Below, in pieces: positions 4,821 through 55,700 of a DNA stretch of 64,000 nt (positions within the stretch are counted from its first letter, which is position 1; every line of letters begins with the position of its first letter). Both the position numbers and the translations under genes were made by a program. The notes below the pieces were generated by a model. The model was not told the origin of the DNA and did no database searches. It saw only the letters and a list, made by a program, of their open reading frames with translations. Origin of the DNA: Macrostomum lignano (Eukaryota); contig NIVC01000090.1 of the NCBI GenBank assembly GCA_002269645.1, positions 62,001 to 126,000 of the forward strand. The letters are read 5' to 3'.

Positions 4821-7800
4821 TCATGCACTCCTGCATGATCCTTGACTCTGCCTAAATATAAATACAAGAAGTAAGTTGTGAATGCCAGTAAGTAAAGTAT
4901 TCAGTTGAACGCGTTGCAAAATAAAATGACACGATGTTATATTTTTCAAAAGCTGTATTAATTAACTGAAAATGATGTTACTGATGTTGTCTTCTCGATC
5001 CATTTATACTTGACCAGAGGTGAACTTTTTGGAGCTTCTGTGACTTTATCAAACCAATTAAATTCTAGAACTGTATAGTATCTTGCAAAATAAAAAAGTA
5101 TTACATGTACTATATATTGTGTTTTGGTTTCAACCAAACATGTGTTTTTAGTTTTTCTCATGTCTTTAGGAGTCCAGAAAGATATAAGATTTTTTTCAAG
5201 CGGGGAAATTGCGTGCCGTGCCCTTCGAAATTAATCAATAGGCTGGCAAAATTATAGTCCCCTCCTGTACAGTGCTTGATATCTTGTAAAACCGAAGTAG
5301 CATACGATCCATGTACACGATCGTACATACTGATGTACATGTACAGTTGATTGTTATGTTAAAATTATCAGCCTTCAGCTGACGTAATTTGCCAGCCGAC
5401 GTTTGCCAGCCGACGTTGCCAGCCGATCGACGTTCACCTAGACCACAGAAACTAGAATACTATATAGATGGGCCACTTCAGCACATTTGCGTGTAAACTA
5501 CTTTCAGTTCAGTAGTAAGTTAACATGCAAAAGCATTTTTATGTATTTTAAAGCTACAAGACTCATTTATTGGCTCTTACCCTCTAGCTTAAAACCTCCA
5601 ACTGCGCTTTTCAGTTTCCACAATATTTTATAAAATAGCCCGTATTATTCTTTGCTACGGACTGAAAGTAGAAAACTTGTTTGTTTTGCTAAGATGCCTG
5701 AGTGGCAGATCTACTTATTTTAGTAGTGAATTATATTAAATTAGATTAGAAGCTTAGATTTGGGCTCTACATTCAATTTTACAGCTCAACCCAGCTAGAA
5801 CTTGTCGTTATTCTTCGTTGCTGGTAGTGATTTTGATTATATCACCCCTTCGCATTGAGGCTCTTCACGGCAATCGATTCCAGAACCAGAATCGGTTCGG
5901 ATTTCCAAGAAAAAAAGCAGTACAACTTTTTAACTTTGTTGAATGTTTGACTGCCTTAACAGCCTCACTCTGCACAATTTTTCACTTTCTTCTTGGCTAT
6001 TGCCATCCAATAATCACAATTTTAAAGCACTAAAATCCCTCTAGTTTAGGAGACAAAAAGTTATACTTTACAAATTGGTTCTGGTTCTAGAACCAGAACA
6101 AGCAATATGAAGAGCCTCATTGTCTAACAGGGATCGGACGAGCGGAATCGTACACGTGCGTTAAGCCGATCGATCTTCTGACTCTTGGGGTCCTGGCTCC
6201 CGTCGGTGTCCCCCCTGTGTAAAAGGGCAATCTTGTGGAATTGTTGGTCTTGTGTTTGCGAAGTTTACATTTACCATGTAATCTTAAATTGCTTAGGACT
6301 ATGCCTTCTGCCTAAAATTTAGTTAGATTTTTTTGCCTTATATAGTAGTTAGGCCTATGGATGGTCTTATGATAAGACTCTTATCAAGTTATCATATGGA
6401 TTGAATGGTTTGAAATTTGTCTTCATCTCATTCAGACAGTTAGAAAATGTACCACTAGGATATATAGATAGGGCAGGTTGAGTAGGGCCTAATGCCAGTG
6501 ACAGTGTTGCATTCATGAATGGCCTAGTATTCATTTAGGTTTGATTTATTTAACAGCTTGCATGCATGGCAGCCGTCCACTCCACAGTCTACCCAGTGTT
6601 TAAATTTCATGCATGGCAGCTGTATCTTAACTTATTATATAGGGCCTAATATGTCATATACTGTTTGAATTATTGATATTTAAAAATTAACAAATATAAC
6701 TATGAATTGAAATTACAAGTAATAAGTTATTAAATAAGTTCAGTCAGTAGCAACATGCAGATTTGAGGAAAAGGATCCAATTTGCAATTCACTATATTGC
6801 CAATCTGCTGGCTGCCATGCACACAATTAAAAACACTAAATGGATGCCAGATAGTTGCTGTGCACACAATTAAAATACTAGGCCTAGGTAGACAGTTGCA
6901 ATGTCTACAATTTAAACATTGCTATATAGATAGATAGAGCTGCTATGCATGCAATTTAAACACTGGGTAGATAGCTAGGGGCCTACCATGCATACAAGCT
7001 TTCTGTTTAGGCTATTTAATTACCATTAGCCAGAGCTAGCAGGGGTAGATCTAGAGGGGGCCAAGGGCAAAGGCTATACTTTTTTGGCCTGTAAATAATT
7101 TATGCCAAGTCCTTTTTTAATATTGGATTGTAGTATTTGACTGCTTAGTGTAGCTTGTTCCCCCCTTAAAATTTTTCTTAATCTATGCTTGAAGCTTAAT
7201 AAAATTAACTAGGCCTAAGTCAATGGGCCCCCTATTTATATTGTATTTATAGGCCTAATTAGCTCCTATCTTCTGTCTATAATTGTATAAATCTAATAGC
7301 TTTGCTTTTGTTAATTTGTTTATTAAGTTCAGCATTTTTTGTAAGATAGCAAATCTTTTAATTGGCTTATTTTTTTGTATATTAACATGTATACCAAATG
7401 TCTTAAGTATAGGCCTACCCTATAAATTTCTAATATACATGCCTTCTTCTTCTAGACTATGAATTATACCTAGTGTTTATATAAGCAATAATTGTTCAAT
7501 GTTTGCTTGTTTAAAATAAGTGCTTGCCTTATATAGACAAGAATTAAAAAAAGAAATTATGAATTTTAGCTATAGATGAATAAATGCTAGAAATATTTTT
7601 TAAAGTTTTAGTCTATTAGTATTTTAGTTTTATAATTTTTTAATCTTAATAAAAAATAGGCCTATACAGTTTTTAGACTATAATAAAATTTTCAGTAATA
7701 TATACAAGTATGTATATACTTCAAAAAAAATATTAAAAAGTTAGAATAGAACTTAAACTAAATGATATATAGCTTAGAAAAAACAATATTCCAGGTTTTA

Positions 7801-8438
7801 GGATATACTAAAATATAAAAAATAATATAGCAGACTATGCCACTAATCATGTTAAGTTGATATATCAACTATCAATAAGTCTGCAATATGTTTTTTAAGT
7901 TTCTAATATAGTTTTCATAGTTTTATCTTTTTTGTACTTTATTATAGTTTTTTGATATTATTGCTAGGTCTTAGGCAATATCTAGTATTTGCATCTACTA
8001 CTCTGCAACAGTTTAAAGTGCATTGCACAGCCTTAAGCAGAGGCTAGTGAAAAGAAAAAACTTAAGAAGAGTAGTTATAGTTAGAATTGGATTAAAGCTT
8101 CCACTTATTGACCAATAGTTTTAAGATAGAAACTTTAATATGTTGTTGATTAAGAAAGCTAGATACTTGTATCATTTTAACATCTTAAGTCCTATTTTAA
8201 AATCAAAATAATGTGCCAAAAAAGAAGTTGTATGTCATGTTTATAAGTAGCAGGTTGGACAAGATCACATATTTAGTACAAGCAAGCACACAATTCCACT
8301 ATAATGGAATTGTAATCATAATCTACCTCATTATTAATTTTGGTGATCTCAATTGATGGTTTGACACTTGGCTTCGAGTGCTTAAATGTCTAGGCCACTT
8401 TTAGTTCATAACTACAACTACAACTACTTCATATACTA

Positions 8439-9802: not shown

Positions 9803-10121
9803 AAAACTCGTGAACAAAATTGTTTAAACTCACTTTTCAAGAGGTGCTCTGCTCAGAAAAAAAGTACATATGTCTATTGATTTTTAAGGACCGTTTCTCG
9901 CTTGACAGTGTCTTCTAAAATTCACAATCAATCAGATTCTTTGCTTTAACATTTTTGTAGAAATTCGCTATTTCTCCATTGTTTTTTAATTAATTGATTA
10001 ATTGACTCGGATTCTTTCTGACACGCTGCTGCTTCAGAACCAAGATTCTTTTTAATTTTAAGGTTTTTGTTGCGCTAGAATTGAAAAAAAGTTGCTGATT
10101 TTCTGAACTTCCTTATTTTGT

Positions 10122-23430: not shown

Positions 23431-23482
23431 CAACTGACACCACTGCCGCCACATTTACTATATAATTAATATTAACTATTAA

Positions 23483-30271
<6,789 letters not shown>

Positions 30272-33774: not shown

Positions 33775-34008
33775 CAGGGGTCGGCAAATGTTTTTCAACT
33801 TTTGGGCTAAATATAGAATCTATAGCGCAAGATGGCTGCGGGCCAGAGAGAGGAGAGAAGGGAGAGAAGTGGAAGAGGAGAGAAAAAAGAAAGAGAACTG
33901 AGAAGAGTCACAATAAGCCTCGAGCGGGCCGGGGTTGCTCAATTATTGCTGCATGTAAAGTTTCAAAGGACCCGAGGGCTTCGCGGGCCGGATTTTGCCG
34001 ACCCCCTG
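33775..34008. mobile_element. hAT-type MITE
   Basis: TIRs CAGGGGTCGGCAAA / TTTTGCCGACCCCCTG; 8-bp flanks TCGTACAA / ACGTACAA (7 of 8). Confidence 0.8.
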
Positions 34009-35957: not shown

Positions 35958-37524
35958 TTATTGAACACCGTTGCTAGGACCCGGCGTAGCAGACTGATCA
36001 CCTGGGTGATTGCGACTCGACGCCTGCCATTTGAGGTACATCCACTTCTCCTTGAAGTACATCCACCTTGGAAAATTGACAAAAATTGATGGGAAAATTG
36101 CTTTGCATACATCAGAATCCTAAAAATGTACTTTTGCAGTTAATGAAATAAATTTACGAGAGCTATTTGGTTCGTCCCAAATTAAAAAAAAACTTGTTTC
36201 ACTGTTTGTTTGTTTGAGTATGTTTTCCGGGAAGGTTATACGAGCGTAATTATATTCAGCCATCAAATTAAATTGCATGTACATGTAGCAGTTGTTCTTC
36301 TAAAGTTTACATCAATCATGCACTCTAAAATTGATTTTTCATAGTTTTCGTTTTCAAGTCTTCAATAGTTATGCTTAATTATTTATTGACTGTAACTTTA
36401 TAGTTTTGAAGAAGTTGCAATGTGTCATTATTCGCTCTTATACGAAAATACTCAGGTCGCAGTTTATTTAGTGTTCCAGATGATCGATTTTCCAAAAGAA
36501 ACAAAACCTTTAAAGCCGGTTAACATGTTCGTGACTCACCTGTAAGCCGAATAAATTGACCAAGTGTTGACATCGTCTGCGACTGACTCAACAGCGTCTC
36601 GGCCTTGCACCTTCCAGTCATCGGGCTTCACGAACATTCTCGGCTCAATCATTCGTTCAATCAGCGGTTCAATGATCGCTCGTAGCTGTGCGATGTCATT
36701 CTGAACATTTTTAACCTCTTCAACTCGAAGCTTCTGCTCGGATTGAATTTTCATGCCAAGAACGGTTTTAACTGTCTGCGTGATCTCCGCTAATCGACGG
36801 ATTGACGCTTGGCACTGAAAATAATTTATACACTTGGTTGCTATGCAAATTGCACTTGCGATTGAATGATAATGACGAAAAAACTACTCATATATGGAGG
36901 CTGTACAACTTCAAGCTTCATGAGCTCGATGTCCGCCATGCCCGTAAAACAATCGTACACGTATCGACGACACAATGACTTTTAGACTTCATCAGCTGAC
37001 CCAAACTTTCTAAAAACAATCTAAATAAAGTATCCTGCAATTTTGAGCTTGCAAAAACTATCAACCTCTATATTTATTTCCAATCGAGTTTCAGTAAAAA
37101 TGACTAAATAATAACCACAAACCTTTGAAAAACTCTGACTTAGTGACTGTCGCTTAATCTCTTTTGGTCAATCTAATAAATAAGTCAAAACCCTTGGAAG
37201 AATTGTCACACCTCTTCCAAATCCCGTTTAGTGATGCCCTCGTCCTTGGGAATCAGCGAGCGAACAATGTCGATCTCTTTGCGCAGACTGTCGACGTCTT
37301 GGACCCGACCGGACACCTCAGCTCCGATGTTGGCCCGGGTGTCCTCCTTCAACAGGTTGATTCGTTCCGTGTTGCGGTTCACCTGCATTCGTAAAAGTAG
37401 TTAGTCAGCTTTTGTTTATTTCACTCGCAAAATGAGACACTTTTTAAAGAAAAAAATCCAAAACTGTCTAGCTGGAAAAGCACAAGCAACCAAGCCAAAC
37501 TCAACCAAGCCAAACTTGCAAAGC

Positions 37525-40800: not shown

Positions 40801-43800
40801 ATCCCTCACCTGCTCCTGGCGCGCCTCCTTCTCGTACGCCAGCCGAGACTCTTGCTCCTGCAGAATCATCTTCTCAGACTCTGCCTGCCGCCTCGCCGCC
40901 TCCTCTCTCAATCGAATCTCTTTCTCTAGAATTTTCTGGTTCACCTCCTCTAGCGAGTCCTGCAGTCGGGCCTGCAGGGTGGCGCGGTCGACTTCGGCTT
41001 GGCGCTCGCGCTCCCGCTGTCGCTGCTCCATGCCGTGCAGCGCCTCGTCTCGCTTGCGCGCCTGCTCGGCAAGCGCGGAGTTCATCTGCGTCAGCCGGCT
41101 GCCCAGCTTCTGCTCCAGATTCCTGCGCTCGTCCGACTCGGTCTCCGATCTGAGGTTGGTGAGGGTGTGGACGAAAACAAACTGCTCGTCTCCTAGGGAA
41201 TTCCCTGTTACTATTTTTAGAAAATGGAAATCCCAACTGTTTTATTCCGATGCGCAGGAAATCCCTGTTGCTATTTTTATCTTAAGGAGTGTGGACCCCC
41301 GTAGTTATTTTTAGCAAATGGAAAATCCACGTTGCTATTTTTATGCAAGAGAGAATCCCGTTGTGTCTAAAGTAAATCCTTTAACGCATTTTCAGATGTG
41401 CTTATTGGTTTTTTGTTGTCATTGTTTATCGATAAAATAAATACCGAGTTGGCTTTTCAAATTTAACGCTAAAATACTACTGAACTACTTACAGTAGCAG
41501 ACGCATTTAAAGATGGTTTAATAATCTATTTGCCACATGCAGCGCCTGCCACTCCGATAATACTTAGTTTTTGTAATAAAAAGGGAACTGAGAATTTTTT
41601 GTCTTGGTTGCCATTAGCAACCGAAGGCTATAGGTTCGTGTGCCCATTCTCTCTACTCCGGAGAGGAAGGAAGCTCAGCATCCAAGGCCGATCAGCATCA
41701 ATTGTTCCTTTCTACAGTGTAGTCTAATGGGCCCCAGCTCTTTTAACCCCGGGCGAGTGAATGAAACTTTAGAACAATATGTATAGTCTACCCAACGACA
41801 AGGCTCTGCTGCAAGTGAAGTGCAAACCAAAGAAAAAGGCAAGATTCTTTTTTGCTGGGCTTTGCTATGCTTTGCACTTTTAAATTATCATTTGAAAGTT
41901 CATTTAAGAATTTAATTCATTTAAGAATTTGAAAATTCACTGACAAAATTTAGGTAAGTAGTTCACAATTATTAAACTTGTGATTCACGGAATTCACTAT
42001 GTTTATTCGCAATCTGTGATTCACGGGTAGATAGAACTGTAGACAAGGTGTGGTTCACGGGTAGATTGAACTGTAGACAAGGTGTGGTTCACGGGTAGAT
42101 TGAACGGTAGACAAGGTGTGATTCACGGGTAGATTGAACGGTAGACAATGTATGATTCACAGATAGATTAAGTGGTAGAAAATACAAGATTCACAAGTAG
42201 ATTAATGGCTAGACAATCTGTGATTCACGAGTAGATTTAACGGTAGACAGGTGTGATTCCCGGGTAGATTGACGGTAGACAAGGTGTGATTCACGGGTAG
42301 ATTGACGGTAGACAAGGTGTGATTCACGGGTAGATTGAACGGTAGACAAGGTGTGATTCACGGTTAGATAAGTAGACAAGTTAGTTTACATTTTAACTGT
42401 GCTATCAATCATTTCTAAGTTCGAACTCACCTGGACCTCAGCTCAGTCAGGGCATCTCTCAGCTCTGTTATTTTGGCGTCCACCAGACCTCTCAGCTGCT
42501 GACTCTGCTGATCCAGTTCACTCGTCTTCTCCAGCTTCCTCTGCACACTTTCAAGCCTCAAGTTGTAATCGTCTTCAAGTCGGCGACTTTTCACTTTCAA
42601 ATCGCTGGTCACGGTGGAAAAGTCCAAGCCCTGCGCTTCGAGGCGCTGTTTCAAAGCGCGCATCTCTTCGACGAGTTGGAAAGCGACACGTTCTAGCTGG
42701 CCTTTGGCGCGGGTCATGCTCTGAGGAGAATTTTGGAGTTGAAATTTTGCAGTTTGTTAAAACTAAAAGCTCCTTTTAGGGAATACCGAAGCTCCGTCGA
42801 TCGGGGGCCAAAGATTCTGTAGAAAGGGGCGCCAAAATTCTGTAGAAAGGGGCGCCAAAGATTCTGTAGAAAGGGGCGCCAAAGATTCTGTAGAAAGGGG
42901 CGTCAAAGATTCTGTAGAAAGTGGGGCGCCAAAGATTCTGTAGAAAGTGGGGCGCCAAAGATTCTGTAGAAAGGGGCGCCAAAGATTCTGTAGAAAGGGG
43001 CGCCAAAGATTTTGTAGAAAGGGGCGCCAAAGATTCTGTAGAAAGGGGCGCCAAAGATTCTGTAGAAAGGGGCGCCAAAGATTCTGTAGAAAGGGGCGCC
43101 AAAGATTCTGTAGAAAGTGGGGCGCCAAAGATTCTGTAGAAAGGGGCGCCAAAGATTCTGTAGAAAGGGGCGCCAAAGATTCTGTAGAAGGGGGCGCCAA
43201 AGATTCTGTAGAAAGGGGCGCCAAAGATTCTGTAGAAAGGGGCGCCAAAGATTCTGTAGAAAGGGGCACCAAAGATTCTGTAGAAAGGGGCGCCAAAGAT
43301 TCTGTAGAAAGGGGCGCCAAAGATTCTGTAGAAAGGGGCGCCAAAGATTCTGTAGAAAGTGGGGCGCCAAAGATTCTGTAGAAAGTGGCGCCAAAGATTC
43401 TGTAGAAAGGGGCGCCAAAGATTCTGTAGAAAGTGGGGCGCCAAAGATTCTGTAGAAAGGGGCGCCAAAGATTCTGTAGAAAGGGGCGCCAAAGATTCTG
43501 TAGAAAGTGGGGCGCCAAAGATTCTGTAGAAAGGGGGGGCACCAAAGATTCTGTAGAAAGGGGCGCCAAAGATTCTGTAGAAAGTGGGGCGCCAAAGATT
43601 CTGTAGAAAGGGGCGCCAAAGATTCTGTAGAAAGTGGGGCGCCAAAGATTCTGTAGAAAGGGGCGCCAAAGATTCTGTAGAAAGTGGGGCGCCAAAGATT
43701 CTGTAGAAAGGGGCGCCAAAGATTCTGTAGAAAGTGGGGCGCCAAAGATTCTGTAGAAAGTGGGGCGCCAAAGATTCTGTAGAAAGTGGGGCTCCAAAGA

Positions 43801-44846
43801 TTCTGTAGAAAGTGGGGCTCCAAAGATTCTGTAGAAAGTGGGGCTTCAAAGATTCTGTAGAAAGTGGGGCTCCAATGTTTCTGTAGAAAGTGGGGCTACA
43901 ATGTTTCTGTAGAAAGTGGGGCTTCAAAGATTCTGTAGAAAGTGGGGCTCCAATGTTTCTGTAGAAAGTGGGGCGCGAAAGCTTCCTTAGAGGAACATGA
44001 AAAAGGGGGCAGTTGAAAGTCCAATCGCCGAAATCCAATGCGAATGCTCACCTCGAGGTCGCGTTCCAGTGTGGCAATGCGACTTATCTGCGATTCTCTC
44101 TTAGCGGTGAGATCCTGCTGCCTCTCCAGCGTGAGCTGCTCCACCGATCGAGTCTGGTTCACCACATCGGCCAGGGCGGCCCGTTCGTCAGCCAGCCGCT
44201 CCTCCTGCGCCCGGATTCGCTGGGCCAGCTGCGAAGTCAAATCTGATGAGGTGCGCAACGACGCCTCGAGATACTGGCGCGCCTGGCGTTCCTCTCTGAT
44301 CGCCTCTTCACCGCGACGCGACACGGCACGAACTTCCGTCTGCAGGCGGAGCACCTCGTCTAGGAGGCCTCGATTGGATCGTTCAGCGAGGCCTAGGCGG
44401 GTCTCCAGGCTGCGGACGCGCTCGTCTGAAGAGGAGTCGGCTGCGGAGTTTGCAGCGGGGGCAGCTGAGTAGCTTGAAGCATTGAAGGGCCGAGCGAGGG
44501 GCTCCAGCTGCTGCTCCTGCCCTGAGATGTCTGGCAAAGGCGGAAATCGGCTGGGGAACTGTTGTTGTTGCTGCTGCTGCTGCTGCTGCTGTTGCTGTCG
44601 TTGCTGCGCTGTCGGCGAGGGTGGCAGCTGCGACTGCGGCTGTGGAAAGCTGCAGAATAAATAAAATTAGCGGAAAATCTTGTTGGTGCGACTAGCTATG
44701 TACTTGATAATAATTGGGTGGTATGAATACGCGCAAGGCGTATCAGTCAACAAAATCGCATGTTTTGTCAGGACGTCGATGATGCATTCCGCATCATCTT
44801 CATGCACTTGTGCGTCTTGCCCTTGCATTTGTTTATCTGCCTTCAT
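35958..44846 (-). CDS. CCDC154: CCDC154-like coiled-coil protein; exons 44846-~44732(or ~44703), 44649-44052, 42720-42431, 41149-40810, 40488-40168, [39385-39380], 38974-38834, [38574-38557], 38063-37944, 37382-37212, 36814-36540, 36066-35958
   Basis: Phases agree across GT-AG junctions; C-terminus PRMFVK...VNTWSIYSAYRWMYFK resembles CCDC154 PRVFIK...NCWGVYQAVRWLRWK (recalled, not searched); first exon and microexons tentative. Confidence 0.7.
37525..37852. repeat. Compound tetranucleotide microsatellite (GTAA)n-(CTAA)n-(CTGA)n
   Basis: Direct reading. Confidence 0.95.
39563..39985. repeat. 30-bp minisatellite (CTCAGCAATTCTCCCCATCAGCCTTGACAT)
   Basis: About 14 units. Confidence 0.95.
40610..40740. 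repeat. 33-bp repeat (GACTTCAGACAAACACACATCAATCGATCATAT)
   Basis: 3-4 units. Confidence 0.85.
42015..42380. repeat. ~34-bp minisatellite (GATTCACGGGTAGATTGAACGGTAGACAAGGTGT)
   Basis: About 11 units. Confidence 0.9.
42800..43978. repeat. 21/23-bp minisatellite (GGGGCGCCAAAGATTCTGTAGAAA[GT])
   Basis: About 48 units filling one CCDC154-like intron. Confidence 0.97.
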
Positions 44847-47148
44847 GCATTTTTCCTTTGCAAGGCAAAAAATAGGACAGCCAAAAACTTTCTCGAAAGT
44901 GGAAGCCGTCAGTTGTGCACCCAGTCTTATTTCTGTCTCTCGAGATTCAACCCAACCCTGCCCAGGTTGGCCCATAGACGACTATTTGCTTCATAAATTC
45001 TTGCGAGAAAGTCTTGCAAGCCAAGAAAACTTAATTCATGTCTTTTGCAGATTTTCTTAGCTTGAGAGAATTTCTACGCGCAAAAATCTCGACAGTTAAG
45101 AAAATATTTTCCTTTTTTTCTTGGCTTACAAAAATTTCTGCCGAGATTTTCTCGATTTTTATTAATAGCTACCGTCCATTATCTTCGTCTCTATCTCTTA
45201 GTTTTTTATACGCGTTCGTTGGTTCAAAATATTTATCGAGGAATTAATTAAGCAATCTGTTAGTTAACTCTGAGGGACAATCTTTCTTTGGTGAATTTTC
45301 CAAATCAGGACTTTAGCTACGGTTTGAAAAAGCAAACCAAGGTAAAAGTGATATGTGAATTTTGGAACAGCTGATCACAAGGCGTCTATGTGACGATCAC
45401 AAACCTCTGCTTCTATTAACGATTTTTTGAAAGAATAAGATTCTCACAAATTTATGCAGTGAATCAGAGTTTATATTGAGACATTTTGAAAGAAATGCTG
45501 ACGATTGTAAATATATTAAACTCGTAGCGTAAAGCGCAAGCAAAGCAAGATGAAAAAAGCGAATCATCCTGCTACAGCATTCTCGTATTACTTCAGTATT
45601 TAGCAACTCTTTGCATGCTTCAAAATGCTCGAGTATACTGGAAACCGAGCTACTGGAAACCGTCTAAATTAAATTGGTTTGCTAGCTCACCTTACTTGTG
45701 AAATCGAATGATTGTGGTTGTGACTGGGAATGGCTTACAACAATTAATGAAACAGATTTAATTAGCTATACGATAAAATCCACGCCACTAAAAAGCAAGC
45801 ATCTACTGGCAAAGTTTTTGCAACAAACCTGCGTCGAAGTGGCTGCTCAACGACGCGATAATTTACAAAGTGTTCGGTCGAATTTCGTGCACTGTTCATG
45901 ATTGGCTGCAGAAAAATGTTGATACAGTTAATACTAATAGCACGCAACTTTCCAACTAGTAATTTAATGGCATTCATCGAATTGAAAAAGTAAAAAAAGC
46001 ATACATTTTTAGACTATGCTTTTTTACGAGTATTTACCTAAACAGTGAGAATTTTCCGAAAGTCACACATTACTCTTAATTTTTTATGACGAATGTAATT
46101 ACTCGTAGTGTCAAATATCGCAAGCCCAATAAAATTTTTACTAGTATAAAAGTATAAAACTTTCCTTTGTCTTCAATATTTCAATACAAAGTAAATTAAG
46201 GAATTAAAATATGTAAAATGCAAAATCAGTCATAAAAATCTTTCCTACCTTCTTGTAATAAGTTGGGATGACATTTAGTTCAGCTGCAGCAAGTAACAAG
46301 GCTAATTAAATAAATTATATGCACATGGTAATTCTTGTACGGAAAAAGCTCTAAATAAACGAAACTAAAATTTACCTGACGCAACAACTAAATAATTTTC
46401 TTTTTTGTACAAAGACCCACGGTAAAAATGAACAGTAACAAATATAAAATATCAGATTGTTAGTTTAAAAAACTATGCCTACGGCAAAAATAAAGCTGTA
46501 AAAATTGTTTTAACGTACAACTTTTTGCGCTCGTTCAAACCGACATATCATGTTTCTGAGAAAGTACGCACGCACACAACACACAAAGCCAGATTGTTAT
46601 TGATTGTTATGGCCTGGACCTAAGCCGCAATGCGCAATGAATTGGCTAATTAAGAAGACTTCAACGAGTCATAATCTAGTCATTTTATTCAATTTCTTAC
46701 TTATTATAAATGAGACGTGTATTAGACGATAGACGTTTATTCATTTTTTCTTCTGGTTGAAGTTAAAGGCCTACTACTGCCATACTGGCATTATGTTCTA
46801 CTTCTAGGCCTATTAATTGTTGGGCAATGCTGCAATGCATATTGCTATAAAGGAAAATAGCCAACTGTTCTGACTTGTATATATATTTAAATTAATTCAA
46901 TTGTAAGCCTATTCAACTTAGAAACATTTAGATAGAAGCCTTAACTCAAGGCTTGTGCTAGTAAAACTATAAAAGTTGTTGTCAGAATAAGTTGTTGACT
47001 TATAAGTCCTTATTCTGTAAGTAATGTAGGGTGTATCTAAATGTAAATTATAGTACCTAGCTAATCCTTATAATTAAATAGGCCTAAAAACAAAACAATT
47101 CATAAGGATTTTAAGGCTAGGCTTGTTGTGTAGGCTGTTTTTATGATA

Positions 47149-47601
47149 GGCAGTTGTTATTTGTCCGGTGAATGGACAAATAGCGATGTGGTTATTTGTC
47201 CGGTTACTGGATACTAACCATGCTTTCCAATTTATTTGGTTAATACCGGACAAATAGACATTTTGTTATTTGTCCAGTTAAATTGATAATGCTAAAATAT
47301 CTAGTTCATAAAAACCACAAGGTTAAATATTCCTAGACTTCAAAGACTTCTTACTCATATCTTGATTATTAGGGGCCTATATTGTTATACTAGTGTGTGT
47401 CTTATACATCAAATTATGCCAAATTGAATATACTGCTTTGCTTACACTCTAATATATAAGAAAATATTAATCAGTATATAAGAAAAGGTCTTAAAATCTA
47501 GAATATTCATCATTAAACAAATAAGATACTTGTGTTAGCAATTTAACCGGACAAATAGCAAAAAGGCTATTTGTCTAATCACTGGACAAATAACAACTGC
47601 C
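47149..47601. mobile_element. Mutator(MULE)-type MITE
   Basis: 36-bp TIR GGCAGTTGTTATTTGTCC..., perfect 9-bp TSD TTTATGATA (47140-48, 47602-10), internal TTATTTGTCCRG subrepeats. Confidence 0.85.
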
Positions 47602-49070
47602 TTTATGATATTATTGATAGTTGCTTCCATGTATATATAGTATAGGCATAGCCATAAATATAATAGGCCTAGTATGATTTTTTATCTTTAGTAACTTGGA
47701 CTTTTTCTAAAAATCAAATAGTTTTTATCCATAAATTGCACCTAAAATTTAGCTATGGCTAGGCCTAATGATGACTAATGATTAGGCCTAATCTTTATTT
47801 AGTTTATTGCAACATTAGCTAATTGACATGGTCTATTGCTCCTATTTATCATTTAATTCTTAAATAACTACTAACTTATAAGATTACTAAGTGAAGATAT
47901 AAATATAAATAAGTAGGCCTAAACCTAATAATTTACAAAAATCTTTATCATAATATCAAAAATGAATATATCTATTGTCTATAAAAAATTTAAAGCCTAA
48001 ATTAAAATGCTGAATAGAATTTATATATATAAAATCATTATTTGAATTAGTCGGGTATTTTATTATCTTGGCCATTTAGTATATTTAGGCTTATTTATTT
48101 AGATCTAGAGGTTGGACAAGATCTGCCAATTGATATTTCAAGATGCCAAGTGCCAAGAATCCAAGAAAATTAACTCATTAAAGTGGTACCTATATTAAGG
48201 AATTTAGCCAAGTGTTTAAAAAATAAAGCACTCCAAATTTTGGTGTTATGATTTAAAGGCTATGATTTTTTACTTTTGTTTTTCAAATATACATATAGTT
48301 GTACCAAGAGAACTGCTATTTTTAGTTTTCAGCTTTGTCTAATATGAATACGGTACTTAAAATCTCTATCAAATATTATATCATATTGTCAACAAAATGT
48401 TAAATTTGTAAAAATCCTGAAAATTTAAGGAATTGTCCAACAGAAAATGTCAAATCGCCCTATTTAGATCATATTCATAATAGCCTAAGATAGTTTTTTT
48501 AGAGTTACTTTTGTTATATATATTTTTATATATATGTTACCAATTTCAAATCTAATAGATTTAGACCTACATTTGATAATTTGTAAGCCTAATATACAAA
48601 GAGTATATGAAGAAAAATCAAGTGTTTTATTGTTTATAACAATATTAAAATACAATAATTATGTTTTAGTAGTATAGTATATAAATGCATAACTTCTGAA
48701 TTAAATAGATTAGGTATTTATAAGTAAGGCCTAAGTGCAAATTCTAATTGCCCATCATTTATGTTGTCTCATTTCACTTCTATTTGTAAAAAATATAAGT
48801 AGAATCATTATATTACATCATTATACTATGTTATTATTATAGAAAGCTTTAATTAAAATAAAAAATGCTTATCAGTATTTTAATTTTATATAATGTATAT
48901 AGTTATATAATATAGAGAATTTAAAAAAACTTAAATTATCTATGTTGTATTCAATTTTTTATTCTATTTTGATATATATTATGTTATATATGTTATTATA
49001 TATATAGCATTGTTATTTATACTTGCTTAATGGGTTGTTGCCTAGTGAAAATGTTTTTAGCCTAGTAAGA

Positions 49071-49320
49071 GGGTTGTAGTCTAGTGGTTAAAGCATTAGA
49101 CATTACTTGAAGGTTGGGAGATTGATTCTTAGCTATAAAATTAACCTAGCTATAAAATGGGTATCAATATTAGCTAGGGTATTTAAGGATATCTATGGTG
49201 ACCTAGTCCTTAGACTAAACAGCTATATGCAGCCTTTAGATATAGTGCACAAAGGTTGCAACTAAGCTGTTGGTTGCATATCTGGCCTAATTGAAGCAAG
49301 TGTAAACAATTATTATTATT
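49071..49320 (+). mobile_element. Hypermutated copy of CORE-SINE family B
   Basis: Colinear with 28884-29190 and 60545-60842 (head, CAGCTGTAAAATGGG to TAGCTATAAAATGGG, ATT tail); differences mostly C>T/G>A. Confidence 0.85.
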
Positions 49321-50472
49321 ATATATGCTAAAGATATACAACTATAGCTTAATGGTCTAATATAGTATTCTTATATATTAGTGGTCTATATGTGGCGTAA
49401 ATTAGAATCTTGGCTTATATCTACTAATGTCCTTAGGTCAAATCTCAAAGGCACAATGAAATGTATATGGCTAATGGTATATAAAATTAGAGGCATATAT
49501 ACTCTTGTATAAATGTATGCCTACTATCAAAGTGGGAAAAGGTCACATTAGTCATTTTGCCAATTGTATACAATGTCACTTAAACTGTATTAGGGTGCAT
49601 ATAGCCTTTTGCTTCTAACTAAAATAAGCTTAGGATATTTTAGTATGATTGTCTTTCAATCATATAAATATAAGAATTATGTATCTTTTATGTAATTCTT
49701 TTTAGCCTATCTTTTAGGCTATCTTACTATTAAATAAAAATGCTAAGTAGCTTTTGTATACTAATAAGCTATCAAAATATAGGTATTTTTTCAAATGACT
49801 AAAATTTTAATTTAAATTATTGAGACTTTGTAGTTAACAAAAATAGCAATCTAACTTGTTTTTTTGCTAGTTAAAATTAACATATAATATAGTTTAAAAT
49901 TTTTATAAATGATGTTAATAGACAATTTTTAAAGATTTAATAGCTTAATTTTTGAGGTGCCATGGAATCCTGGATTTAGAACCCCTAATGCTAGATAGAT
50001 ACCCTGTTTTTTCTAAAAGGTGTCAACCTTACTAAACCTGTAACAAATGAAACTATCAAGAACAAATATCATATTAAACTAGAAATAAAACTGTAAAATC
50101 TAAATTAAACCATTTTTTTGTTTGAATGCAAATTGCAAATATATTTTTTTCTAAAATTCTAAATTCTTTTCATCTGATTTTGAAATATTTCTTTTTTATT
50201 TTATTTTGAAGCTCTGAAATTTAGGGGCAAATAAAAATGAATTAGTATTGACAACTTGAGTGTCTTGTCTTGACAAATGGCAATAAAAGTTGGTGTCATA
50301 TATTTGTTAGGAATTTAGAAAGATAGAAATTTTCCTAATTTCAAACTTTCTGATTGATGCCACCTAGCATCCTGGTTTTTAGTTTTGCATTGGGGTTTTG
50401 GACCCTAGATTCCAAATGGCACTGCAATTTTGACAAAACCTAATTTAATAATGTACTTATAAATCTATTATC

Positions 50473-51120
50473 AAGGACAACTTAAATAAGATAGGGAAAA
50501 TGCACTATAGAGATAGGAAGTTTTCATTTTTCAGCACAAAAATTGTTATTGCTTTTTATTGGAGGCAGATCCTATGTTTATCTTTCAATATGTTGTGCCT
50601 TTCTTATTGCTCTATGAATATTAATAAAGCTTTTCATTCAGAAAATTAGGATTCTATGTTAATTTATTATTCTACATACATTTCCTATACCTAACAATCA
50701 TAAAAAGGCATGGCACAGCTCCAATCTTAGGTTTTATGAATCTATTTTATCATCTCTGTTGCAAATATCTGTTATACAGTCAGCTAAGAATGATAAAATA
50801 GACTCAAAAACCAAAGAGCCAAGCTGTGCTATTTTAATGGTTTTTAGGCACAAGACATTTGCAAATGTATGTAGAATAAAAATTAACATAGAGTCCTAAT
50901 TCTTTAAACAAAAAGCTTTATGGATATCAATAGAGCAATAAGAGAGGCACTGCATATCAAAAGATGAACACTGGATCTGCCTCCTATCAAAAGCAATAGC
51001 AATTTATGTGCTGAAAAAATGAAAACTTCCTATCTCCGTAGTGTATTTTTTTCGGGAAAGCCTGCCTTCTAAAATTTTCTAAGAAACAAGCTTTCCCATT
51101 CTTCTACTTAAGTCGTCCTT
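50473..51120. repeat. ~650-bp imperfect palindrome (foldback/MITE-like)
   Basis: Left arm AAGGACAACTTAA..GAGATAGGAAGTTTTCATTTTTCAGCAC.. aligns to the reverse complement of the right arm over >250 bp. Confidence 0.85.
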
Positions 51121-51639
51121 GTCTATTTCTATTATATGCTCCTACAAGTAGAATGAACATATCCATATTTATACCAATAAAAACAAAACCAATAATTATT
51201 TTCATGTACTGAATTACTAAAAGTAGTATGATCGCTAAATAGCTATTTTTTATTCCTAGCATATGCTGTTAGTAGATCTTTAGATGTAATTTTTTTGTTA
51301 TCTATGGTTGATTTTTTTCATCTATATTTAGTAAATTCAGATTGGGTTTTTTACTTCAATAAAGTTTCCTAATTTAGATTGGGTAGGTCTTCCTTGCTAG
51401 GCTTTTCTTTGTAGATCTAAAGTGCAAATTTTTCTTTTCTCCCATAAGCAATACATTTTTTGTCTACTATAAACATTGTCTCTTGCTTTTCTGATTTCTG
51501 TCCTGCCTTCTTGGCCATTTCTTTCTTTCTTTTTCCCGTCTTGTATATACAAGCTTTTCACTTCCATCCCTGCTGTGACCTGATCTGGCTGGTTCATGGA
51601 CTTCTAGACACAGATGCCTGGAATGACATCCCTTTGATA

Positions 51640-52100
51640 ACGTTACCGTGACAAGAATCGCTAAAGAGTCATTGCAAACACCTCACTAGTGACTCTAGCG
51701 ACTCTGCAGCGACTATTGTGACTTTTTAACGACTCAAACAAATGTAATAGCGGCGAATGTTAAGCCACGAGTGCATTACGTGATTTCCACAGTCATTGTG
51801 TTAGTGCTTAACTTCTACTATCTCGAGTAGACTAAATAGAGTTGTTATAAATGCAAAATGCGATTCAAATTCATCAAGTGACGCAGGTGCACTTTAGACG
51901 CAACTTAGTGATTCTACAGCGTCTCTAGCATGCCTCAGATACAACTGTACGGCCCCAGAGTCATTTTAGAATCGCCTCAGGCTCAAAGTCCCAGACAATT
52001 AAACGTCTCAAATTGACTGTTAGGCGAATCTTTGATGACTTTTTGGCGACTTGTACAGTGACATCTCATCGTTTAAGAGTCGTCTAGAGTCACTTCTTTC
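51640..52100. mobile_element. Unclassified dispersed repeat, copy 1
   Basis: Shares GTTACCGTGACAA..AATCGCTA, AAATGC..ATTC.AATTCAT.AAGTGACGCAG and GTCGTCTAGAGTCACTTCTTTCCT with 61817-62200. Confidence 0.7.
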
Positions 52101-52772
52101 CTATTTTAATGTTACTTGCAACTTTTAATGTTACTTTTTTCAATTGGACATCCCTTCATTACAGAACCCAAGCGTCTGAAGCCTATTAATTTTTTTTATT
52201 AGAATAGAGACTTTCGTAGCTAAACGCTTTATGGTTTGTCAAAGTTGGTTAAACACATTCTAGGAAAAGGTTCCAATCTAGTCTAGATATCTATATTTAG
52301 AACTCCACGACTAGCAGCGCCCTCCCCGCTTTCGGGAGTGAACAGAAGAAATCTTCTAGACTGTGCAAAAGTTAGTTTGGAATGTGCGCGCACGGCTTCA
52401 TAGCAGGGCGATGTTGGTCTGAAGTTTTTTTGCCCTTTTCGATTTTCGGGACTTTACGGATATAGCCTAGCGAACTGTTGCTTTGGGGGCGAGGGGGCAG
52501 GTAGGGGCGATGATTTTTTTACGCAAGAAAACTTCCTCTTTTCTAGAGGCTTGATGTATAATAGTAATATTATCCAACAAGCTGATTGGGCCTTGGCTCT
52601 AGGATAACTCATTGGCTGTTGAAATCTATACTTATAGCTACTACTAGGCAACTATCACTCCTTTTTGACATCCATATTTCAGCAGTAGAGGCGTCTGAAT
52701 AGCTGAAATTTATTATGGCTTAAATAGTATAAATACAATACTAATCAATTGCCATATAGAATACGAGTAGCA

Positions 52773-55700
52773 ATGCCTGGATTAGTGCTGTTTAAGCGAA
52801 GATGGTCCATTGGATCCGACGATATTGTTGTACCAGCGGCGCTGCTTTTCTGCTGTCATCTGATTCAGTGAGTTTGACTAGTAGCATTTTTTAAATAATA
52901 GAAGTGAATTCATTTACCCTACTTCATTCTAAGAATCGCTTCTCAGTCCATTCTAGGAATCGCTCCTAAACTTTTCTTAGAAATCGCCCCTAAACTCATT
53001 CTTTAAATTGCTCCTGAACATATTCTAAAAAATCGCTTCTAAACCCATTCTAAAAATCTGTTCTTAACTCATTCCAAGAAATCCTTCTAAACTCATTCCA
53101 AGAAATCCTGCTAAACTTATTCTAAGAAATCGCATCTAAACTGATTCTAAGAAATTGCATCAACTCATTCTAAGAAATTGCATCTAAACTCATTCTAAGA
53201 AATCGCTCCTAAACTCATTCCAAGAAATCCTTCTAAACTCATTCTAAGAAATTGCATCTAAACTCATTCTAAGAAATCGCTCCTAAGCTCATTCCAAGAA
53301 ATCCTTCTAAACTCATTCTAAGAAATTGCATCTCAATTCATTTTAAAAAATCGTTTTTAAATTATTTCGAAGAAATTGCTCATAAACTCAATATTTTCAA
53401 TCGCTTCTTAACCCATTCTTAGAAATCGCTTCTGAATCCATTTTAAGAATCTGTTAAGAACTCATTCTCAGAAATCGCTCGTAAACTTATTCTAAGAAAT
53501 CTCTTCTTTCGCATTCTGAGAATCACTAATAAAGTCATTCTAAGAATCGCTGCTAAACCCATTGCTCACAAGTACATCCACAAAAGTTAATTTGATGCAA
53601 ATCATAATATAATAAACTAAACAGATCAGCCGTAATGCTATCAGTGCTACTAATTTATAATCCAATGACGGATTCTTCAACTGAAGAGTTCTCATCAGCG
53701 CCAACCACATCGGGCACAGTTCTGCCGGCTGAAGATCGTGTCAATTCAACTATAGCAACAACTACAGCAGTGAATGGATTAGAATTGGTCAATAGGAGCG
53801 TGTCCGAATGGGGCCGCACTGTGCTTAGCGGTTATTTTTATAGTCAGCATTCAGCTTGGCCCAGTATAATTAATACTTGCCAGTTCTCTGTGTACACTTT
53901 GATCTATTTAGTACTGCTGTTGGCCTGTTTGTTTGTTGAATTCGCCTGCGCTAAGTGCAGCTTGAGAGGCGGAATATTGGCAGTTGATAGAAGATCGATT
54001 GTTCAATGTTTGCTCTACGTTAGGCTGGGTGAGTTTTTTCTTGAGCTCGTAATTATGCTTTGCTTTGATTGACTTTTTGTGACTGTCTTTCTCTGTCCTA
54101 CTCACTCCTCTCTCTCCCCCTATCCTTCATCTCCTCTCTCCCCCTATCCTTCATCTCCTCTCTCTCCCCTTATCCTTCATCTCCTCTCTCCCATACTCTC
54201 TCCCTTCCTCTCCCTTCCTCTCCCTTCCTCTCCCTTCCTCTCTCCCGTACTCTCTCCCTTCCTCTCTCCCGTACTCTCTCCCTTCCTCTCTCCCGTACTC
54301 TCTCCCTTCCTCTCTCCCGTACTCTCTCCCTTCCTCTCTCCCGTACTCTCTCCCTTCCTCTCCCCCGTACTCTCTCCCTTCCTCTCTCCCGTACTCTCTC
54401 CCTTCCTCTCTCCCGTACTCTCTCCCTTCCTCTCTCCCGTACTCTCTCCCTTCCTCTCTCCCGTACTCTCTCCCTTCCTCTCTCCCGTACTCTCTCCCTT
54501 CCTCTCTCCCGTACTCTCTCCCTTCCTCTCTCCCGTACTCTCTCCCTCTCCCCCGTACTCTCTCCCTTCGTCTCCATCTCCCTCTCCCTTCGTCTCCCTC
54601 TCCCTTCCTCTCTCCCTTTCCCTCTTCCTTCCTCTCTCTCTTTTCTCTCCCTTCGTGTCTTCTTTCAAAGCTTATTGAACGCTTACTTTACCGCTACCTT
54701 GAAAAAGCAAAAGATTGAAGCCCTTTCGAATCAGAAAAGAATCCCCCAGTGTATCCGGTATCTTAGGATAATTAATTAGCTCAAATAGATTTATTTATGC
54801 GCGGCAGATTCGTTTGAAAGCAAAGCAAAACGAATCTGCTGACTCGCTCGCCCACTTACACTCTGTGATCTGATCTAATAACGACAGGCGCTTTCCTGCC
54901 TCTCCGCCTCTCGCCCTCGCCCTCGCCCTTATCCTATTTTCCTGACGCATTAACAAGAAGCATTAGTTAGTTTATATATATGTATATATGCGCGAGTATT
55001 TTTATATTCTAAAAAAGGCACTCGGAAGTTGCCAAAAAGGCTATGCTGATGTGTAGCATGAATACTGTTGTATTTTTATTATCTACCAGAGCTGACCGTG
55101 TGTTAATTATATTGATCGTATAATAGCGTGATTGGATACAATTTACAGCAGCTCTTGACGCTCGAGACTGTAAACTAGTATTTGGGACACTTCACCATCC
55201 ATTCTGTGCAGAATCTGCATATAAAAAAGCTTTTATGTATTTATCTTTAATTACCTTTTTACGTGTTTGGAGAGTGTATTATGATAATGTGATTAATGTC
55301 TGCCTGTATATGCGTCTGTCTGTAGATCTGTAGAAGATATTTCTGTCTGTAGGTCTGTAGACCTGTCTGTAGATCTGTAGACTTGTCTGTCTGTAGACCT
55401 GTCTGTCTGTAGATCTGTAGACCTGTCTGTCTGTGGATCTGTAGACCTGTCTGTCTGTGGATCTGTAGAATATATGTCTGTCTATAGATCTGTAGACCTA
55501 TCTGTCTGTAGATCTGTATATCCGTAGACCTGTCTGTCTGTAGATCTGTAGAATATATGTCTGTCTATAGATCTGTAGACCTATCTGTCTGTAGATCTGT
55601 ATATCCGTAGACCTGTCTGTCTGTAGATCTGTAGAATATATGTCTGTCTATAGTTCTGTAGACCTATCTGTCTGTAGATCTGTAAATCTGTAGACCTGTC

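What the first reader, a model, noticed from the sequence alone, without database searches (positions are those of the whole stretch)
46750..51120. Second, larger CpG-stripped TpA-rich domain: candidate RIP-like genome-defence system in an animal
About 9 CpG in ~4.3 kb by my count, 5 of them in one MITE, between two divergently transcribed genes. The domain is a mosaic of decayed transposon pieces. Identical repeat families inside introns are untouched, so mutation depends on the domain rather than the family. Near-complete CpG loss plus heavy CpA>TpA conversion resembles fungal repeat-induced point mutation, or dense CG+CA methylation with deamination. To my knowledge neither is described for intergenic islands in flatworms.
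Basis: partly seen in the sequence, partly recalled or inferred. Interest (0 to 1): 0.85.

Follow-up and report, generated by a model that had tools for sequence, protein, structure and literature searches.

The report
Old C-to-T mutated islands in flatworm
Between two genes of the flatworm Macrostomum lignano lies a 4.3 kb stretch that lost nearly all its CpG sites and much of its G+C through an old, locally confined wave of C-to-T mutation; this is most simply the scar of past DNA methylation, not a fungal-style repeat-killing system.

Summary
Window 46735-51036 has 9 CpG (about 80 expected, z = -9), GC 27%, and sharp edges. A second island lies at 6260-8374 (1 CpG). Other AT-rich DNA in the window has CpG o/e of about 0.9-1.3.

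The window is Macrostomum lignano, GCA_002269645.1, contig NIVC01000090.1:62001-126000. A duplicated (homeologous) contig carries both islands with the same left edge, so they predate the duplication and are not an assembly artefact.

Two SINE copies nested in the island, polarised with outside copies, carry 43 and 48 shared C:G>T:A changes against 0 and 5 reverse changes. Pooled rates by context are CpG 61%, CpA 51%, CpC 30% and CpT 23%, on both strands and interspersed. Outside copies of the same families carry 1-6 such changes.

Since the duplication the excess has dropped at least 2-5 fold, and young inserts in the islands keep their CpGs.

This is location-dependent, not repeat-induced, so it fails as RIP. 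Past CG plus non-CG methylation with deamination fits best, because the species keeps DNMT1 and DNMT3. This is inferred, not shown.

Separately, the palindrome TAGGCCTA marks the islands and arises as TA<->TA-GGCC-TA indels. These look like transposon excision footprints.

The parts
46735..51036 (.). CpG-free, AT-rich intergenic island 2 (the finding). Record coordinates NIVC01000090.1:108735-113036.
   Evidence: 9 CpG against 79.5 expected, GC 27%. It is conserved as a CpG-free island in the homeolog L007 at 1534-1930 and 5431-8480.
46716..46735 (.). Sharp left edge: the last three CpGs (46716, 46727, 46734), then none for 432 bp.
   Evidence: The homeolog L007 has the same three CpGs (1515, 1526, 1533), then none until a young insert at 2127.
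47149..47601 (.). Young TIR element (MITE) with GGCAG...CTGCC ends, internal TTATTTGTCCGGT repeats and a perfect 9-bp TSD TTTATGATA (47140-47148 and 47602-47610). It holds 5 of the island's 9 CpGs.
   Evidence: It lies in a stretch (47136-47911) that the homeolog L007 lacks. Whether the window gained this stretch or L007 lost it is not resolved, because L007 shows no clean empty site.
49067..49320 (+). Hypermutated copy of the tRNA-derived SINE1, with a private 50-bp deletion.
   Evidence: Alignments. There are 43 shared C:G>T:A changes, 6 transversions and 0 T>C against the consensus of 4 outside copies. Identity is 71-74% in four letters but 92-95% in the purine/pyrimidine alphabet.
49396..49640 (-). 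Hypermutated, 5'-truncated copy of the second SINE family (SINE2). It is detectable only with transition-blind alignment.
   Evidence: There are 48 shared C:G>T:A changes, 5 T>C and 23 transversions.
49955..50425 (.). Old hAT-like MITE with AGGTGCCATGGAATC... TIRs, flanked by AATTTT(T)G. It contains no CpG.
   Evidence: It is present in both homeologs.
50497..51049 (.). Foldback element with arms about 83% complementary. The right arm keeps CTACGGAG where the left arm has CTATAGAG.
   Evidence: 29 transitions and 16 transversions between the arms.
46805..47921 (.). Cluster of six exact TAGGCCTA palindromes (46805, 47079, 47664, 47760, 47783, 47914), plus AAGGCCTA at 46766 and 48726.
   Evidence: The density is 27-55 times the ceiling that C>T decay of ordinary sequence could produce.
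6260..8374 (.). Island 1, of the same kind: 1 CpG, GC 30%, and six TAGGCCTA (6350, 6879, 7210, 7250, 7410, 7657). It lies upstream of the endosulfine gene (9368-9802, + strand).
   Evidence: The homeolog L009 differs from it by five or six TA<->TA-GG(G)CC-TA indels.
28927..29192 (+). Outside SINE1 copy used as a reference. Further outside copies lie at 60585-60845 and 61844-61995.
   Evidence: 3-6 C>T, 2-5 T>C and 2-5 transversions each.
26927..27287 (+). Outside SINE2 copy used as a reference. Further outside copies lie at 11804-12094 and 58279-58481.

Best explanation
The island is a relic of a heterochromatin-like intergenic domain in the M. lignano germline. Inside its fixed borders, cytosines on both strands were converted to thymine far faster than elsewhere. 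The order of loss was CpG first (all lost), then CpA (about half), then CpC and CpT (about a quarter).

The most likely chemistry is dense cytosine methylation by the DNMT1/DNMT3 system that this species retains, in CG and also in non-CG contexts, followed by spontaneous deamination of 5mC over a long period.

Anything that sat in or landed in the domain (SINEs, MITEs, unique DNA) decayed together. The flanking transcribed DNA stayed unmethylated and kept its CpGs.

The strong phase predates the duplication that produced the two homeologous loci. Since then the rate has fallen at least 2-5 fold, and new GC-rich inserts are not being stripped.

Shown: a location-bound, directional, context-biased, two-strand C>T excess, and its timing. 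Inferred: methylation as the cause and heterochromatin as the domain.
For: Depletion: CpG depletion with z = -8 to -9 in both islands, while equally AT-rich neighbours have o/e of 0.9-1.3.

SINE1: 43 shared C:G>T:A, 6 transversions and 0 T>C. Four outside copies have 3-6, 2-5 and 2-5.

SINE2: 48 C>T against 5 T>C.

Pooled context rates: CpG 30/49, CpA 39/76, CpC 22/73, CpT 14/62. CpA against CpY gives an odds ratio of 2.9, p = 5e-4. Every ancestral CpG in SINE1 became TG, CA, TA or TT.

Strands: 26 C>T and 30 G>A, interspersed, with 35 runs against 28.9 expected. This fits many independent events on duplex DNA.

Edges and age: the same left edge to the base, and the same CpG-free state, are found in the homeolog.

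Flanks: there is no CpG hypermutability since the duplication. Transition differences are CG 9.4%, CA 7.6%, CC 10.5% and CT 8.3%. Inside the islands they are CG 5/14, CA 18.2%, CC 9.7% and CT 13.0%.

After the duplication: private changes in the two SINEs are still C>T biased, 13 against 5, p = 8e-5 against equal per-site rates.

Simulation: C>T decay with SINE-derived rates, applied to ordinary window sequence, reproduces the GC content and the TATA, ATAT, TTAA, CTAG and GATC densities of the islands.

Literature: M. lignano retains DNMT1 and DNMT3, has low 5mC, and its methylation pattern is unknown (PMC9246332, PMC11292947, PMC10658182).
Against: No methylation data were examined, so the cause is inferred.

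CpC and CpT cytosines are also mutated about 7 times more than in outside copies. CG plus CA methylation alone does not predict this.

The order CpC >= CpT is not the usual DNMT3 non-CG order (CA > CT > CC).

Polarised evidence comes from only two elements, both in island 2. Island 1 has none.

The right third of island 2 shows no TpA excess.

A young SINE2 copy inserted in the homeolog of island 1 shows no AT bias (6 C>T, 5 T>C). A 2.8-kb hAT-like insert in L007 keeps a CpG o/e of about 0.66. Present-day activity is therefore weak or absent.

Gene bodies, the usual invertebrate methylation target, are not CpG-depleted here.
Confidence: 0.45

Rival explanations
1. Methylation-independent regional mutation bias. 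The island is compact or late-replicating chromatin in which deaminated cytosines (uracil) are poorly repaired, or AT-rich DNA that breathes and deaminates faster. This would give a self-reinforcing drift towards AT in all cytosine contexts.
For: All four contexts are elevated, including CpC (30%) and CpT (23%). The C>T bias persists in the old AT-rich parts after the duplication (13 against 5), but not in the GC-rich young inserts. The changes are two-stranded and interspersed.
Against: Equally AT-rich DNA next door (45000-46734, 34000-36000) keeps a CpG o/e of 1.0-1.3, so AT-richness does not trigger it. Complete CpG loss with a CpG >= CpA > CpY order points to a methyl-cytosine-type specificity. 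An edge sharp to within about 10 bp and conserved between homeologs is hard to obtain from replication timing.
Confidence: 0.22
2. A RIP-like or other enzymatic deaminase defence. A germline cytosine deaminase (RID/Masc1-like methyltransferase-deaminase, or an AID/APOBEC-like enzyme) attacked this DNA in one or a few bursts.
For: Almost pure C:G>T:A change with a CpA preference, up to half of the CpA sites converted, TpA/ApT of 1.05-1.12 (above the 0.89 used for RIP), and both strands hit. Most of the change falls in one interval before the duplication.
Against: It is not repeat-induced. At least four SINE1 and three SINE2 copies elsewhere are unmutated, although they are repeats of the same length. 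(CpA+TpG)/(ApC+GpT) is 1.28-1.34, not below 1.03. There are no strand-coordinated runs. It is not confined to retroelements, and there is no single-strand G>A asymmetry as in APOBEC editing. Six and 23 transversions accumulated over the same interval, so a long period is as likely as a burst. No such system is known in animals (no literature found).
Confidence: 0.08
3. Simply the oldest neutral DNA of the locus (or natively AT-rich, CpG-poor elements), with younger TE and gene DNA around it. The sharp edges would be insertion junctions.
For: SINE2 in the island is clearly older than its outside relatives (23 transversions against 1-8). The MITEs and the foldback may be natively AT-rich. The window has many young insertions and tandem arrays.
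Against: For SINE1, transversions are similar in and out of the island (6-7 against 2-5), yet C>T differs about tenfold. Outside copies show equal C>T and T>C counts at about 50% GC. The ordinary mutation regime would therefore never drive DNA to 27% GC or remove CpG. Flanks show no CpG hypermutability over the same period.
Confidence: 0.08

Closest known systems
CpG decay of germline-methylated domains in mosaically methylated invertebrate genomes, and genome-wide in vertebrates
   Same: A bimodal CpG o/e. Depleted DNA sits next to undepleted DNA. CpG becomes TpG or CpA. DNMT1 and DNMT3 are present in the species. Promoter-proximal and transcribed flanks are spared, as with CpG islands.
   Different: The depleted compartment here is small (2-4 kb) intergenic TE-bearing islands, not gene bodies. 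Non-CpG cytosines, CpA above all, were also lost, which lowered GC from about 42% to 27%. The process looks largely extinct.
Fungal repeat-induced point mutation (RIP) and its AT-rich relics (Neurospora; Leptosphaeria AT-isochores)
   Same: C:G>T:A only, a CpA preference, TpA enrichment, and AT-rich TE graveyards with sharp borders. In Neurospora such AT-rich relics are then methylated in all contexts.
   Different: There is no dependence on duplication, because the same families are untouched elsewhere. CpG is the top target. The second RIP index is not met. There is no strand coordination. This is an animal, and no RID-type gene was examined.
AID/APOBEC editing footprints in retroelements
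   Same: Clustered C>T / G>A hypermutation of retroelement copies.
   Different: Both strands are equally affected and interspersed. DNA transposons and surrounding DNA are equally affected. The preferred context is defined by the base 3' of the cytosine (CpG, CpA), not by the 5' TC/CC/WRC motifs.
Tc1/mariner-type excision footprints (TA + terminal nucleotides + TA)
   Same: TAGGCCTA differs from the empty site in the homeolog by exactly GGCC plus a duplicated TA (or GGGCC plus TA). This is the classic footprint form.
   Different: No donor element with a TA TSD and GG...CC ends was found in the 229 kb in hand. The direction of the indels (gain or loss) is not polarised.

Membership tests
Fungal-type RIP | Mutations are almost exclusively C:G>T:A transitions. 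| tested here: met
   SINE1 has 43 C>T, 6 transversions and 0 T>C. SINE2 has 48 C>T, 23 transversions and 5 T>C.
Fungal-type RIP | Triggered by duplication: repeated copies are mutated wherever they lie, and unique DNA is spared except by leakage. | tested here: not met
   Outside copies of both SINE families carry only 1-6 C>T changes. The whole island is depleted, including DNA with no other copy in 229 kb.
Fungal-type RIP | RIP indices: TpA/ApT above about 0.89 and (CpA+TpG)/(ApC+GpT) below about 1.03. | tested here: inconclusive
   The first index is 1.05-1.12 (met). The second is 1.28-1.34 (not met).
Fungal-type RIP | Strand-coordinated tracts (C>T or G>A runs) from processive events. | tested here: not met
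   35 runs observed against 28.9 +/- 3.6 expected in 56 changes.
Fungal-type RIP | A RID/Masc1-type cytosine methyltransferase homologue in the genome. | not tested
   No genome-wide gene search was possible with the loci in hand.
Methylation-driven CpG decay | A strong local CpG deficit relative to composition and to neighbouring DNA. | tested here: met
   o/e is 0.02-0.13 in the islands against 0.9-1.3 in AT-rich neighbours.
Methylation-driven CpG decay | Ancestral CpG replaced by TpG or CpA. | tested here: met
   8 of 8 aligned ancestral CpGs in SINE1 are now TG (4), CA (2), TA (1) or TT (1).
Methylation-driven CpG decay | A maintenance and a de novo DNA methyltransferase are present in the species. 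| not tested
   Stated for M. lignano in PMC9246332 and PMC11292947. Not verified on sequence here.
Methylation-driven CpG decay | 5mC is present on the domain in germline cells. | not testable with these tools
   This needs bisulfite, EM-seq or nanopore data.
AID/APOBEC editing of retroelements | A single-strand signature (G>A on the coding strand of the retro-copy) confined to the element. | tested here: not met
   30 G>A and 26 C>T changes, interspersed. The flanks and DNA transposons are equally CpG-free.
Tc1/mariner-type excision footprint (for TAGGCCTA) | The footprint is a TA duplication enclosing 2-3 terminal nucleotides of each transposon end. | tested here: met
   Five or six homeolog indels are TA against TA-GGCC-TA or TA-GGGCC-TA. 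None was found in about 44 kb of other homeolog alignments.
Tc1/mariner-type excision footprint (for TAGGCCTA) | A donor element with a TA TSD and GG...CC termini exists. | tested here: not met
   A scan of 229 kb found only a TAGGGAC...GTCCCTA element with a 7-bp TSD (hAT-like) and a TTGG...CCAA mariner-like element.

The most novel reading that the evidence does not exclude
M. lignano has, or had until after its genome duplication, a chromatin-domain-targeted cytosine hypermutation system. This would be an animal analogue of the Neurospora RIP-relic/DIM-2 loop. Small AT-rich intergenic islands are recognised, perhaps through piRNAs or AT/TpA content, methylated in all cytosine contexts or enzymatically deaminated, and act as traps that inactivate any transposon landing in them.
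Probability: 0.1. Interest if true: 0.85.

Novelty: new variant of a known kind. Interest (0 to 1): 0.5.

Why it matters
A 2022 review states that the genomic pattern of DNA methylation is not known for any free-living flatworm (PMC9246332). M. lignano is the flatworm model that still has DNMT1 and DNMT3.

If these islands mark where its germline was methylated, the target was small intergenic TE-bearing islands with non-CG involvement, not gene bodies. That departs from the usual invertebrate pattern. It also gives concrete loci, and a simple sequence signature, for testing where the worm's 'low-level' 5mC sits.

The islands also provide a natural clock. The strong phase predates the genome duplication of this species.

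The TA<->TAGGCCTA indels suggest that a so far unidentified TA-targeting transposon has repeatedly visited the islands.

Tried and rejected
- **tRNA and Rfam scans of the window:** nothing found.
- **Pfam on six-frame translations of the island:** I printed X-masked frames but did not submit them, because TE identity came from DNA alignments instead. A mitochondrial-DNA insert (NUMT) or a decayed transposase gene in the roughly two-thirds of the island without a relative is therefore not excluded.
- **Purine/pyrimidine-coded BLAST:** its E-values are meaningless and the output is flooded by chance hits and satellites. I used only hits above about 90 bits. This is how SINE2 was found.
- **First two protein searches:** they suggested a distant relative of M. 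lignano at 38-51% identity. This was misleading, because those genes are unannotated in the assembly. The DAGL search showed 99% identity, and a 100% DNA match followed.
- **Paralogous M6PR-like locus in M. lignano (L001, L002, L004) and DAGL paralogue loci (L005, L006):** no comparable complex island and no TAGGCCTA. About 100 kb is too little to estimate genome frequency.
- **TAGGCCTA as a by-product of C>T decay:** rejected. Its possible precursors (YRGGCCYR) occur at 0.05 per kb, against 1.4-2.8 per kb observed.
- **TAGGCCTA as part of a longer repeat:** rejected, because there is no flanking similarity.
- **TAGGCCTA in the literature:** the search found only primers and similar uses.
- **Foldback and MITE arm comparisons:** unpolarised and with weak context signal, so uninformative.
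- **Wasik et al. 2015 (bisulfite data for M. lignano):** not held in the library.

Full report
**1. The observation**

The range 46750-51120 contains 12 CpG. Between the flanking CpGs at 46734 and 51037 there are 9 in 4302 bp, and 5 of them lie in one MITE.

Shuffling the bases gives 79.5 +/- 7.6 CpG, never fewer than 55 in 2000 shuffles. GC is 27% against 42% for the window. TpA o/e is 1.04 against 0.81. GpC, CpC and GpG are over-represented.

A second island at 6260-8374 has 1 CpG in 2115 bp. The deficit is not a side effect of AT-richness. Every other complex 1-kb window with GC below 36% (34000-36000, 38250-39500, 45000-46700) has a CpG o/e of 0.9-1.3. The longest CpG-free gaps in the window that are not tandem arrays all lie in these two islands.

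**2. Where the window comes from**

A rhodopsin-type receptor and an M6PR/ATG27-like ORF gave only 38-51% identity to Macrostomum lignano proteins. That was because they are unannotated. The diacylglycerol lipase exons are 99% identical to M. lignano PAA91300.

The contig carrying that gene matches window 42773-64000 at 100% over 21228 bp. The window is therefore GCA_002269645.1, NIVC01000090.1:62001-126000.

The annotation places a 796-aa gene on the minus strand up to window position ~46274, and the lipase gene on the plus strand from 52773. Island 2 occupies the core of a 6.5-kb divergent intergenic region. Island 1 lies between an M6PR-like ORF (3070-3840) and the endosulfine gene (9368-9802).

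**3. Anatomy of island 2**

- Several TAGGCCTA palindromes in the left 1.2 kb.
- A TIR element at 47149-47601 with a perfect 9-bp TSD, holding 5 CpGs.
- A tRNA-derived SINE (SINE1) at 49067-49320.
- A truncated copy of a second SINE family (SINE2) at ~49396-49640 on the minus strand, visible only when transitions are ignored.
- A hAT-like MITE at 49955-50425.
- A 550-bp foldback at 50497-51049.

No relative was found for the remainder.

**4. What happened to the DNA**

SINE1 has four copies outside the islands, in the window and in fetched loci. I took as ancestral the base shared by at least three of them. The island copy then carries 43 C:G>T:A changes, 6 transversions and no T:A>C:G change that are shared with its homeologous copy, plus 2-4 private C>T changes. 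Each outside copy carries 3-6 C>T, 2-5 T>C and 2-5 transversions.

The island copy is 71-74% identical to the outside copies in four letters. In a purine/pyrimidine alphabet it is 92-95% identical. Transversions are similar inside and outside, so this copy is not simply older. It has about ten times more C>T changes.

SINE2 tells the same story, with an older copy: 48 C>T, 5 T>C and 23 transversions.

Pooled over both elements, the fraction of ancestral cytosines (both strands) now T is as follows:

| Context | Converted | Fraction |
|---|---|---|
| CpG | 30/49 | 61% |
| CpA | 39/76 | 51% |
| CpC | 22/73 | 30% |
| CpT | 14/62 | 23% |

CpA against CpC plus CpT gives an odds ratio of 2.9, p = 5e-4. 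Every ancestral CpG dinucleotide is destroyed.

C>T and G>A changes are equally frequent and interspersed, with 35 runs against 28.9 expected.

I applied C>T decay with these rates to the rest of the window. This reproduces the island's GC content and its TATA, ATAT, TTAA, CTAG and GATC densities. A model with uniform non-CpG rates fits CpA, TpG and the second RIP index better. The real island lies between the two models.

**5. Timing, from a homeologous copy**

The protein cluster of the lipase contains a second M. lignano protein on contig NIVC01000684.1, and so does the endosulfine cluster. These loci (L007, L009) are colinear with the window at 84-94% identity and carry both islands.

The left edge of island 2 is identical. 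The same three CpGs are present, and then there are none. The islands are therefore real, are not an assembly artefact, and predate the duplication.

Almost all SINE hypermutation is shared by the two copies, so it happened before the duplication.

Divergence since the duplication is as follows:

| Measure | Inside islands (5461 sites) | Outside (7781 sites) |
|---|---|---|
| Transitions per site | 0.043 | 0.034 |
| Transversions per site | 0.035 | 0.024 |
| Transition differences at CG | 5/14 | 9.4% |
| at CA | 18.2% | 7.6% |
| at CC | 9.7% | 10.5% |
| at CT | 13.0% | 8.3% |

Two conclusions follow. First, the flanks show no CpG hypermutability at all, so the bulk of this genome behaves as unmethylated in the germline. 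Second, a CpA/CpG-biased excess persists inside the islands, but it is weak. Scaled to transversions, the CpA>TpA rate is about 5 times lower than before the duplication, and at least 2.3 times lower allowing for Poisson error on 6 transversions.

Polarised private changes in the two SINEs are still biased, 13 C>T against 5 T>C, p = 8e-5 against equal per-site rates.

DNA that is present in only one of the two copies is not stripped:

- the MITE in the window keeps 5 CpGs;
- a 359-bp SINE2 in L009 keeps 19 CpGs and shows 6 C>T against 5 T>C;
- a 2.8-kb TAGGG...CCCTA element in L007 has a CpG o/e of about 0.66.

**6. Mechanism**

The data require a process with these properties:

- bound to a fixed stretch of DNA with base-sharp edges;
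- acting on duplex DNA on both strands through many independent events;
- hitting CpG >= CpA > CpC and CpT;
- indifferent to whether the DNA is repeated;
- sparing adjacent transcribed DNA.

Dense methylation of a heterochromatic intergenic domain, followed by 5mC deamination, meets all of these. It is available to this species, because reviews state that M. lignano keeps DNMT1 and DNMT3, has low-level 5mC, and has an undescribed methylation pattern (PMC9246332, PMC11292947, PMC10658182).

This remains an inference. The elevated CpC and CpT loss, and the absence of gene-body depletion, do not follow the usual animal pattern.

A methylation-independent repair or chromatin bias is the main rival. 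Against it stands the neighbouring DNA, which is equally AT-rich but CpG-normal.

RIP in the strict sense fails on its defining trigger, on one of its two indices and on strand coordination. APOBEC-type editing fails on strand symmetry and on the involvement of non-retroelement DNA. 'Just old' fails for SINE1, and because the outside mutation regime (C>T about equal to T>C at about 50% GC) cannot produce 27% GC.

**7. An unexpected second feature**

The palindrome TAGGCCTA occurs 12 times in the window. All 12 are inside the two islands, and there are none in the other 57.6 kb. GGCC in the islands is followed by TA in 20 of 24 cases.

There is no similarity beyond the 8-mer. Its density (1.4-2.8 per kb) is 27-55 times the ceiling that C>T decay could produce from YRGGCCYR precursors.

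The homeolog comparison shows how it arises. Five or six of the indels between island 1 and L009 are exactly TA against TA-GGCC-TA or TA-GGGCC-TA, in both directions. No such indel occurs in about 44 kb of other homeolog alignments.

This is the form of a Tc1/mariner-type excision footprint from an element with a TA target duplication and GG...CC ends. No such donor was found in 229 kb. L009 carries 13 copies of the motif, including two in a third CpG-free island at L009:1-1400. These footprints explain the GpC, CpC and GpG excess of the islands.

**8. Verdict**

The 'RIP-like defence' reading is not supported. The 'methylation plus deamination' reading is plausible but untested.

The phenomenon is an old, location-bound C>T hypermutation that is now largely quiescent. 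It is best filed as a new variant of methylation-type sequence decay in an animal whose methylome is undescribed.

The evidence is limited to two islands, two polarisable elements and about 230 kb of one assembly.

Noticed in passing
window 6350, 6879, 7210, 7250, 7410, 7657, 46805, 47079, 47664, 47760, 47783, 47914; L009 (13 sites); L007 (3 sites): The 8-bp palindrome TAGGCCTA is confined to the CpG-free islands. Between homeologs it appears as TA<->TA-GG(G)CC-TA indels, like excision footprints of an unidentified TA-targeting transposon with GG...CC ends.
   Followed up: partly
window 8437-9080: A 644-bp mariner-like deletion derivative: TA|TTGGTTTTTGCATGC... ends, perfect 64-bp TIRs and a weak HTH_28 hit. 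It abuts island 1 and lies in a stretch (8428-9080) that the homeolog L009 lacks, which suggests a recent insertion and an active family.
   Followed up: partly
L007 2099-4855: A 2.76-kb element with TAGGGACTTCAATGAGG... TIRs and a 7-bp TSD ATTTAAG (hAT-like, no transposase ORF found). It lies in the homeolog of island 2, and the window carries the empty site at ~48085. It keeps a CpG o/e of about 0.66.
   Followed up: partly
L009 1-1400 (NIVC01000684.1:214716-216100): A third complex CpG-free, AT-rich island (GC 28-30%, 2 CpG) with TAGGCCTA, including a tandem TAGGCCTAGGCCTA. It has no colinear counterpart in the window.
   Followed up: no
homeolog alignments outside the islands (window 4960-5855, 9081-12052, 45199-46734, 51037-53640): CpG sites differ by transitions no more often than other cytosines (9.4% against 7.6-10.5%). 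Ordinary M. lignano DNA therefore shows no CpG hypermutability since the duplication.
   Followed up: yes
window 32400-33593 (+) and 3070-3840 (+): Intact single-exon ORFs for a GPR19-like receptor (397 aa) and an ATG27/M6P-receptor-like protein (256 aa). Neither has an identical protein on record from this assembly, so they are probably unannotated genes.
   Followed up: partly
window 14500-16360, 22300-25300, 29300-30200, 39500-41400, 42700-44100, 53900-57700: Large minisatellite and tandem arrays (CA-rich, TG-rich, and 24-45 bp units). They produce long spurious ORFs and their own CpG-poor stretches, and should not be confused with the islands.
   Followed up: no
window 49394 / L007 6784: One of the island's rare CpGs (GGCGTA in the window) corresponds to GGCCTA in the homeolog. 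This is a C/G transversion inside the decayed SINE2, not a footprint.
   Followed up: yes
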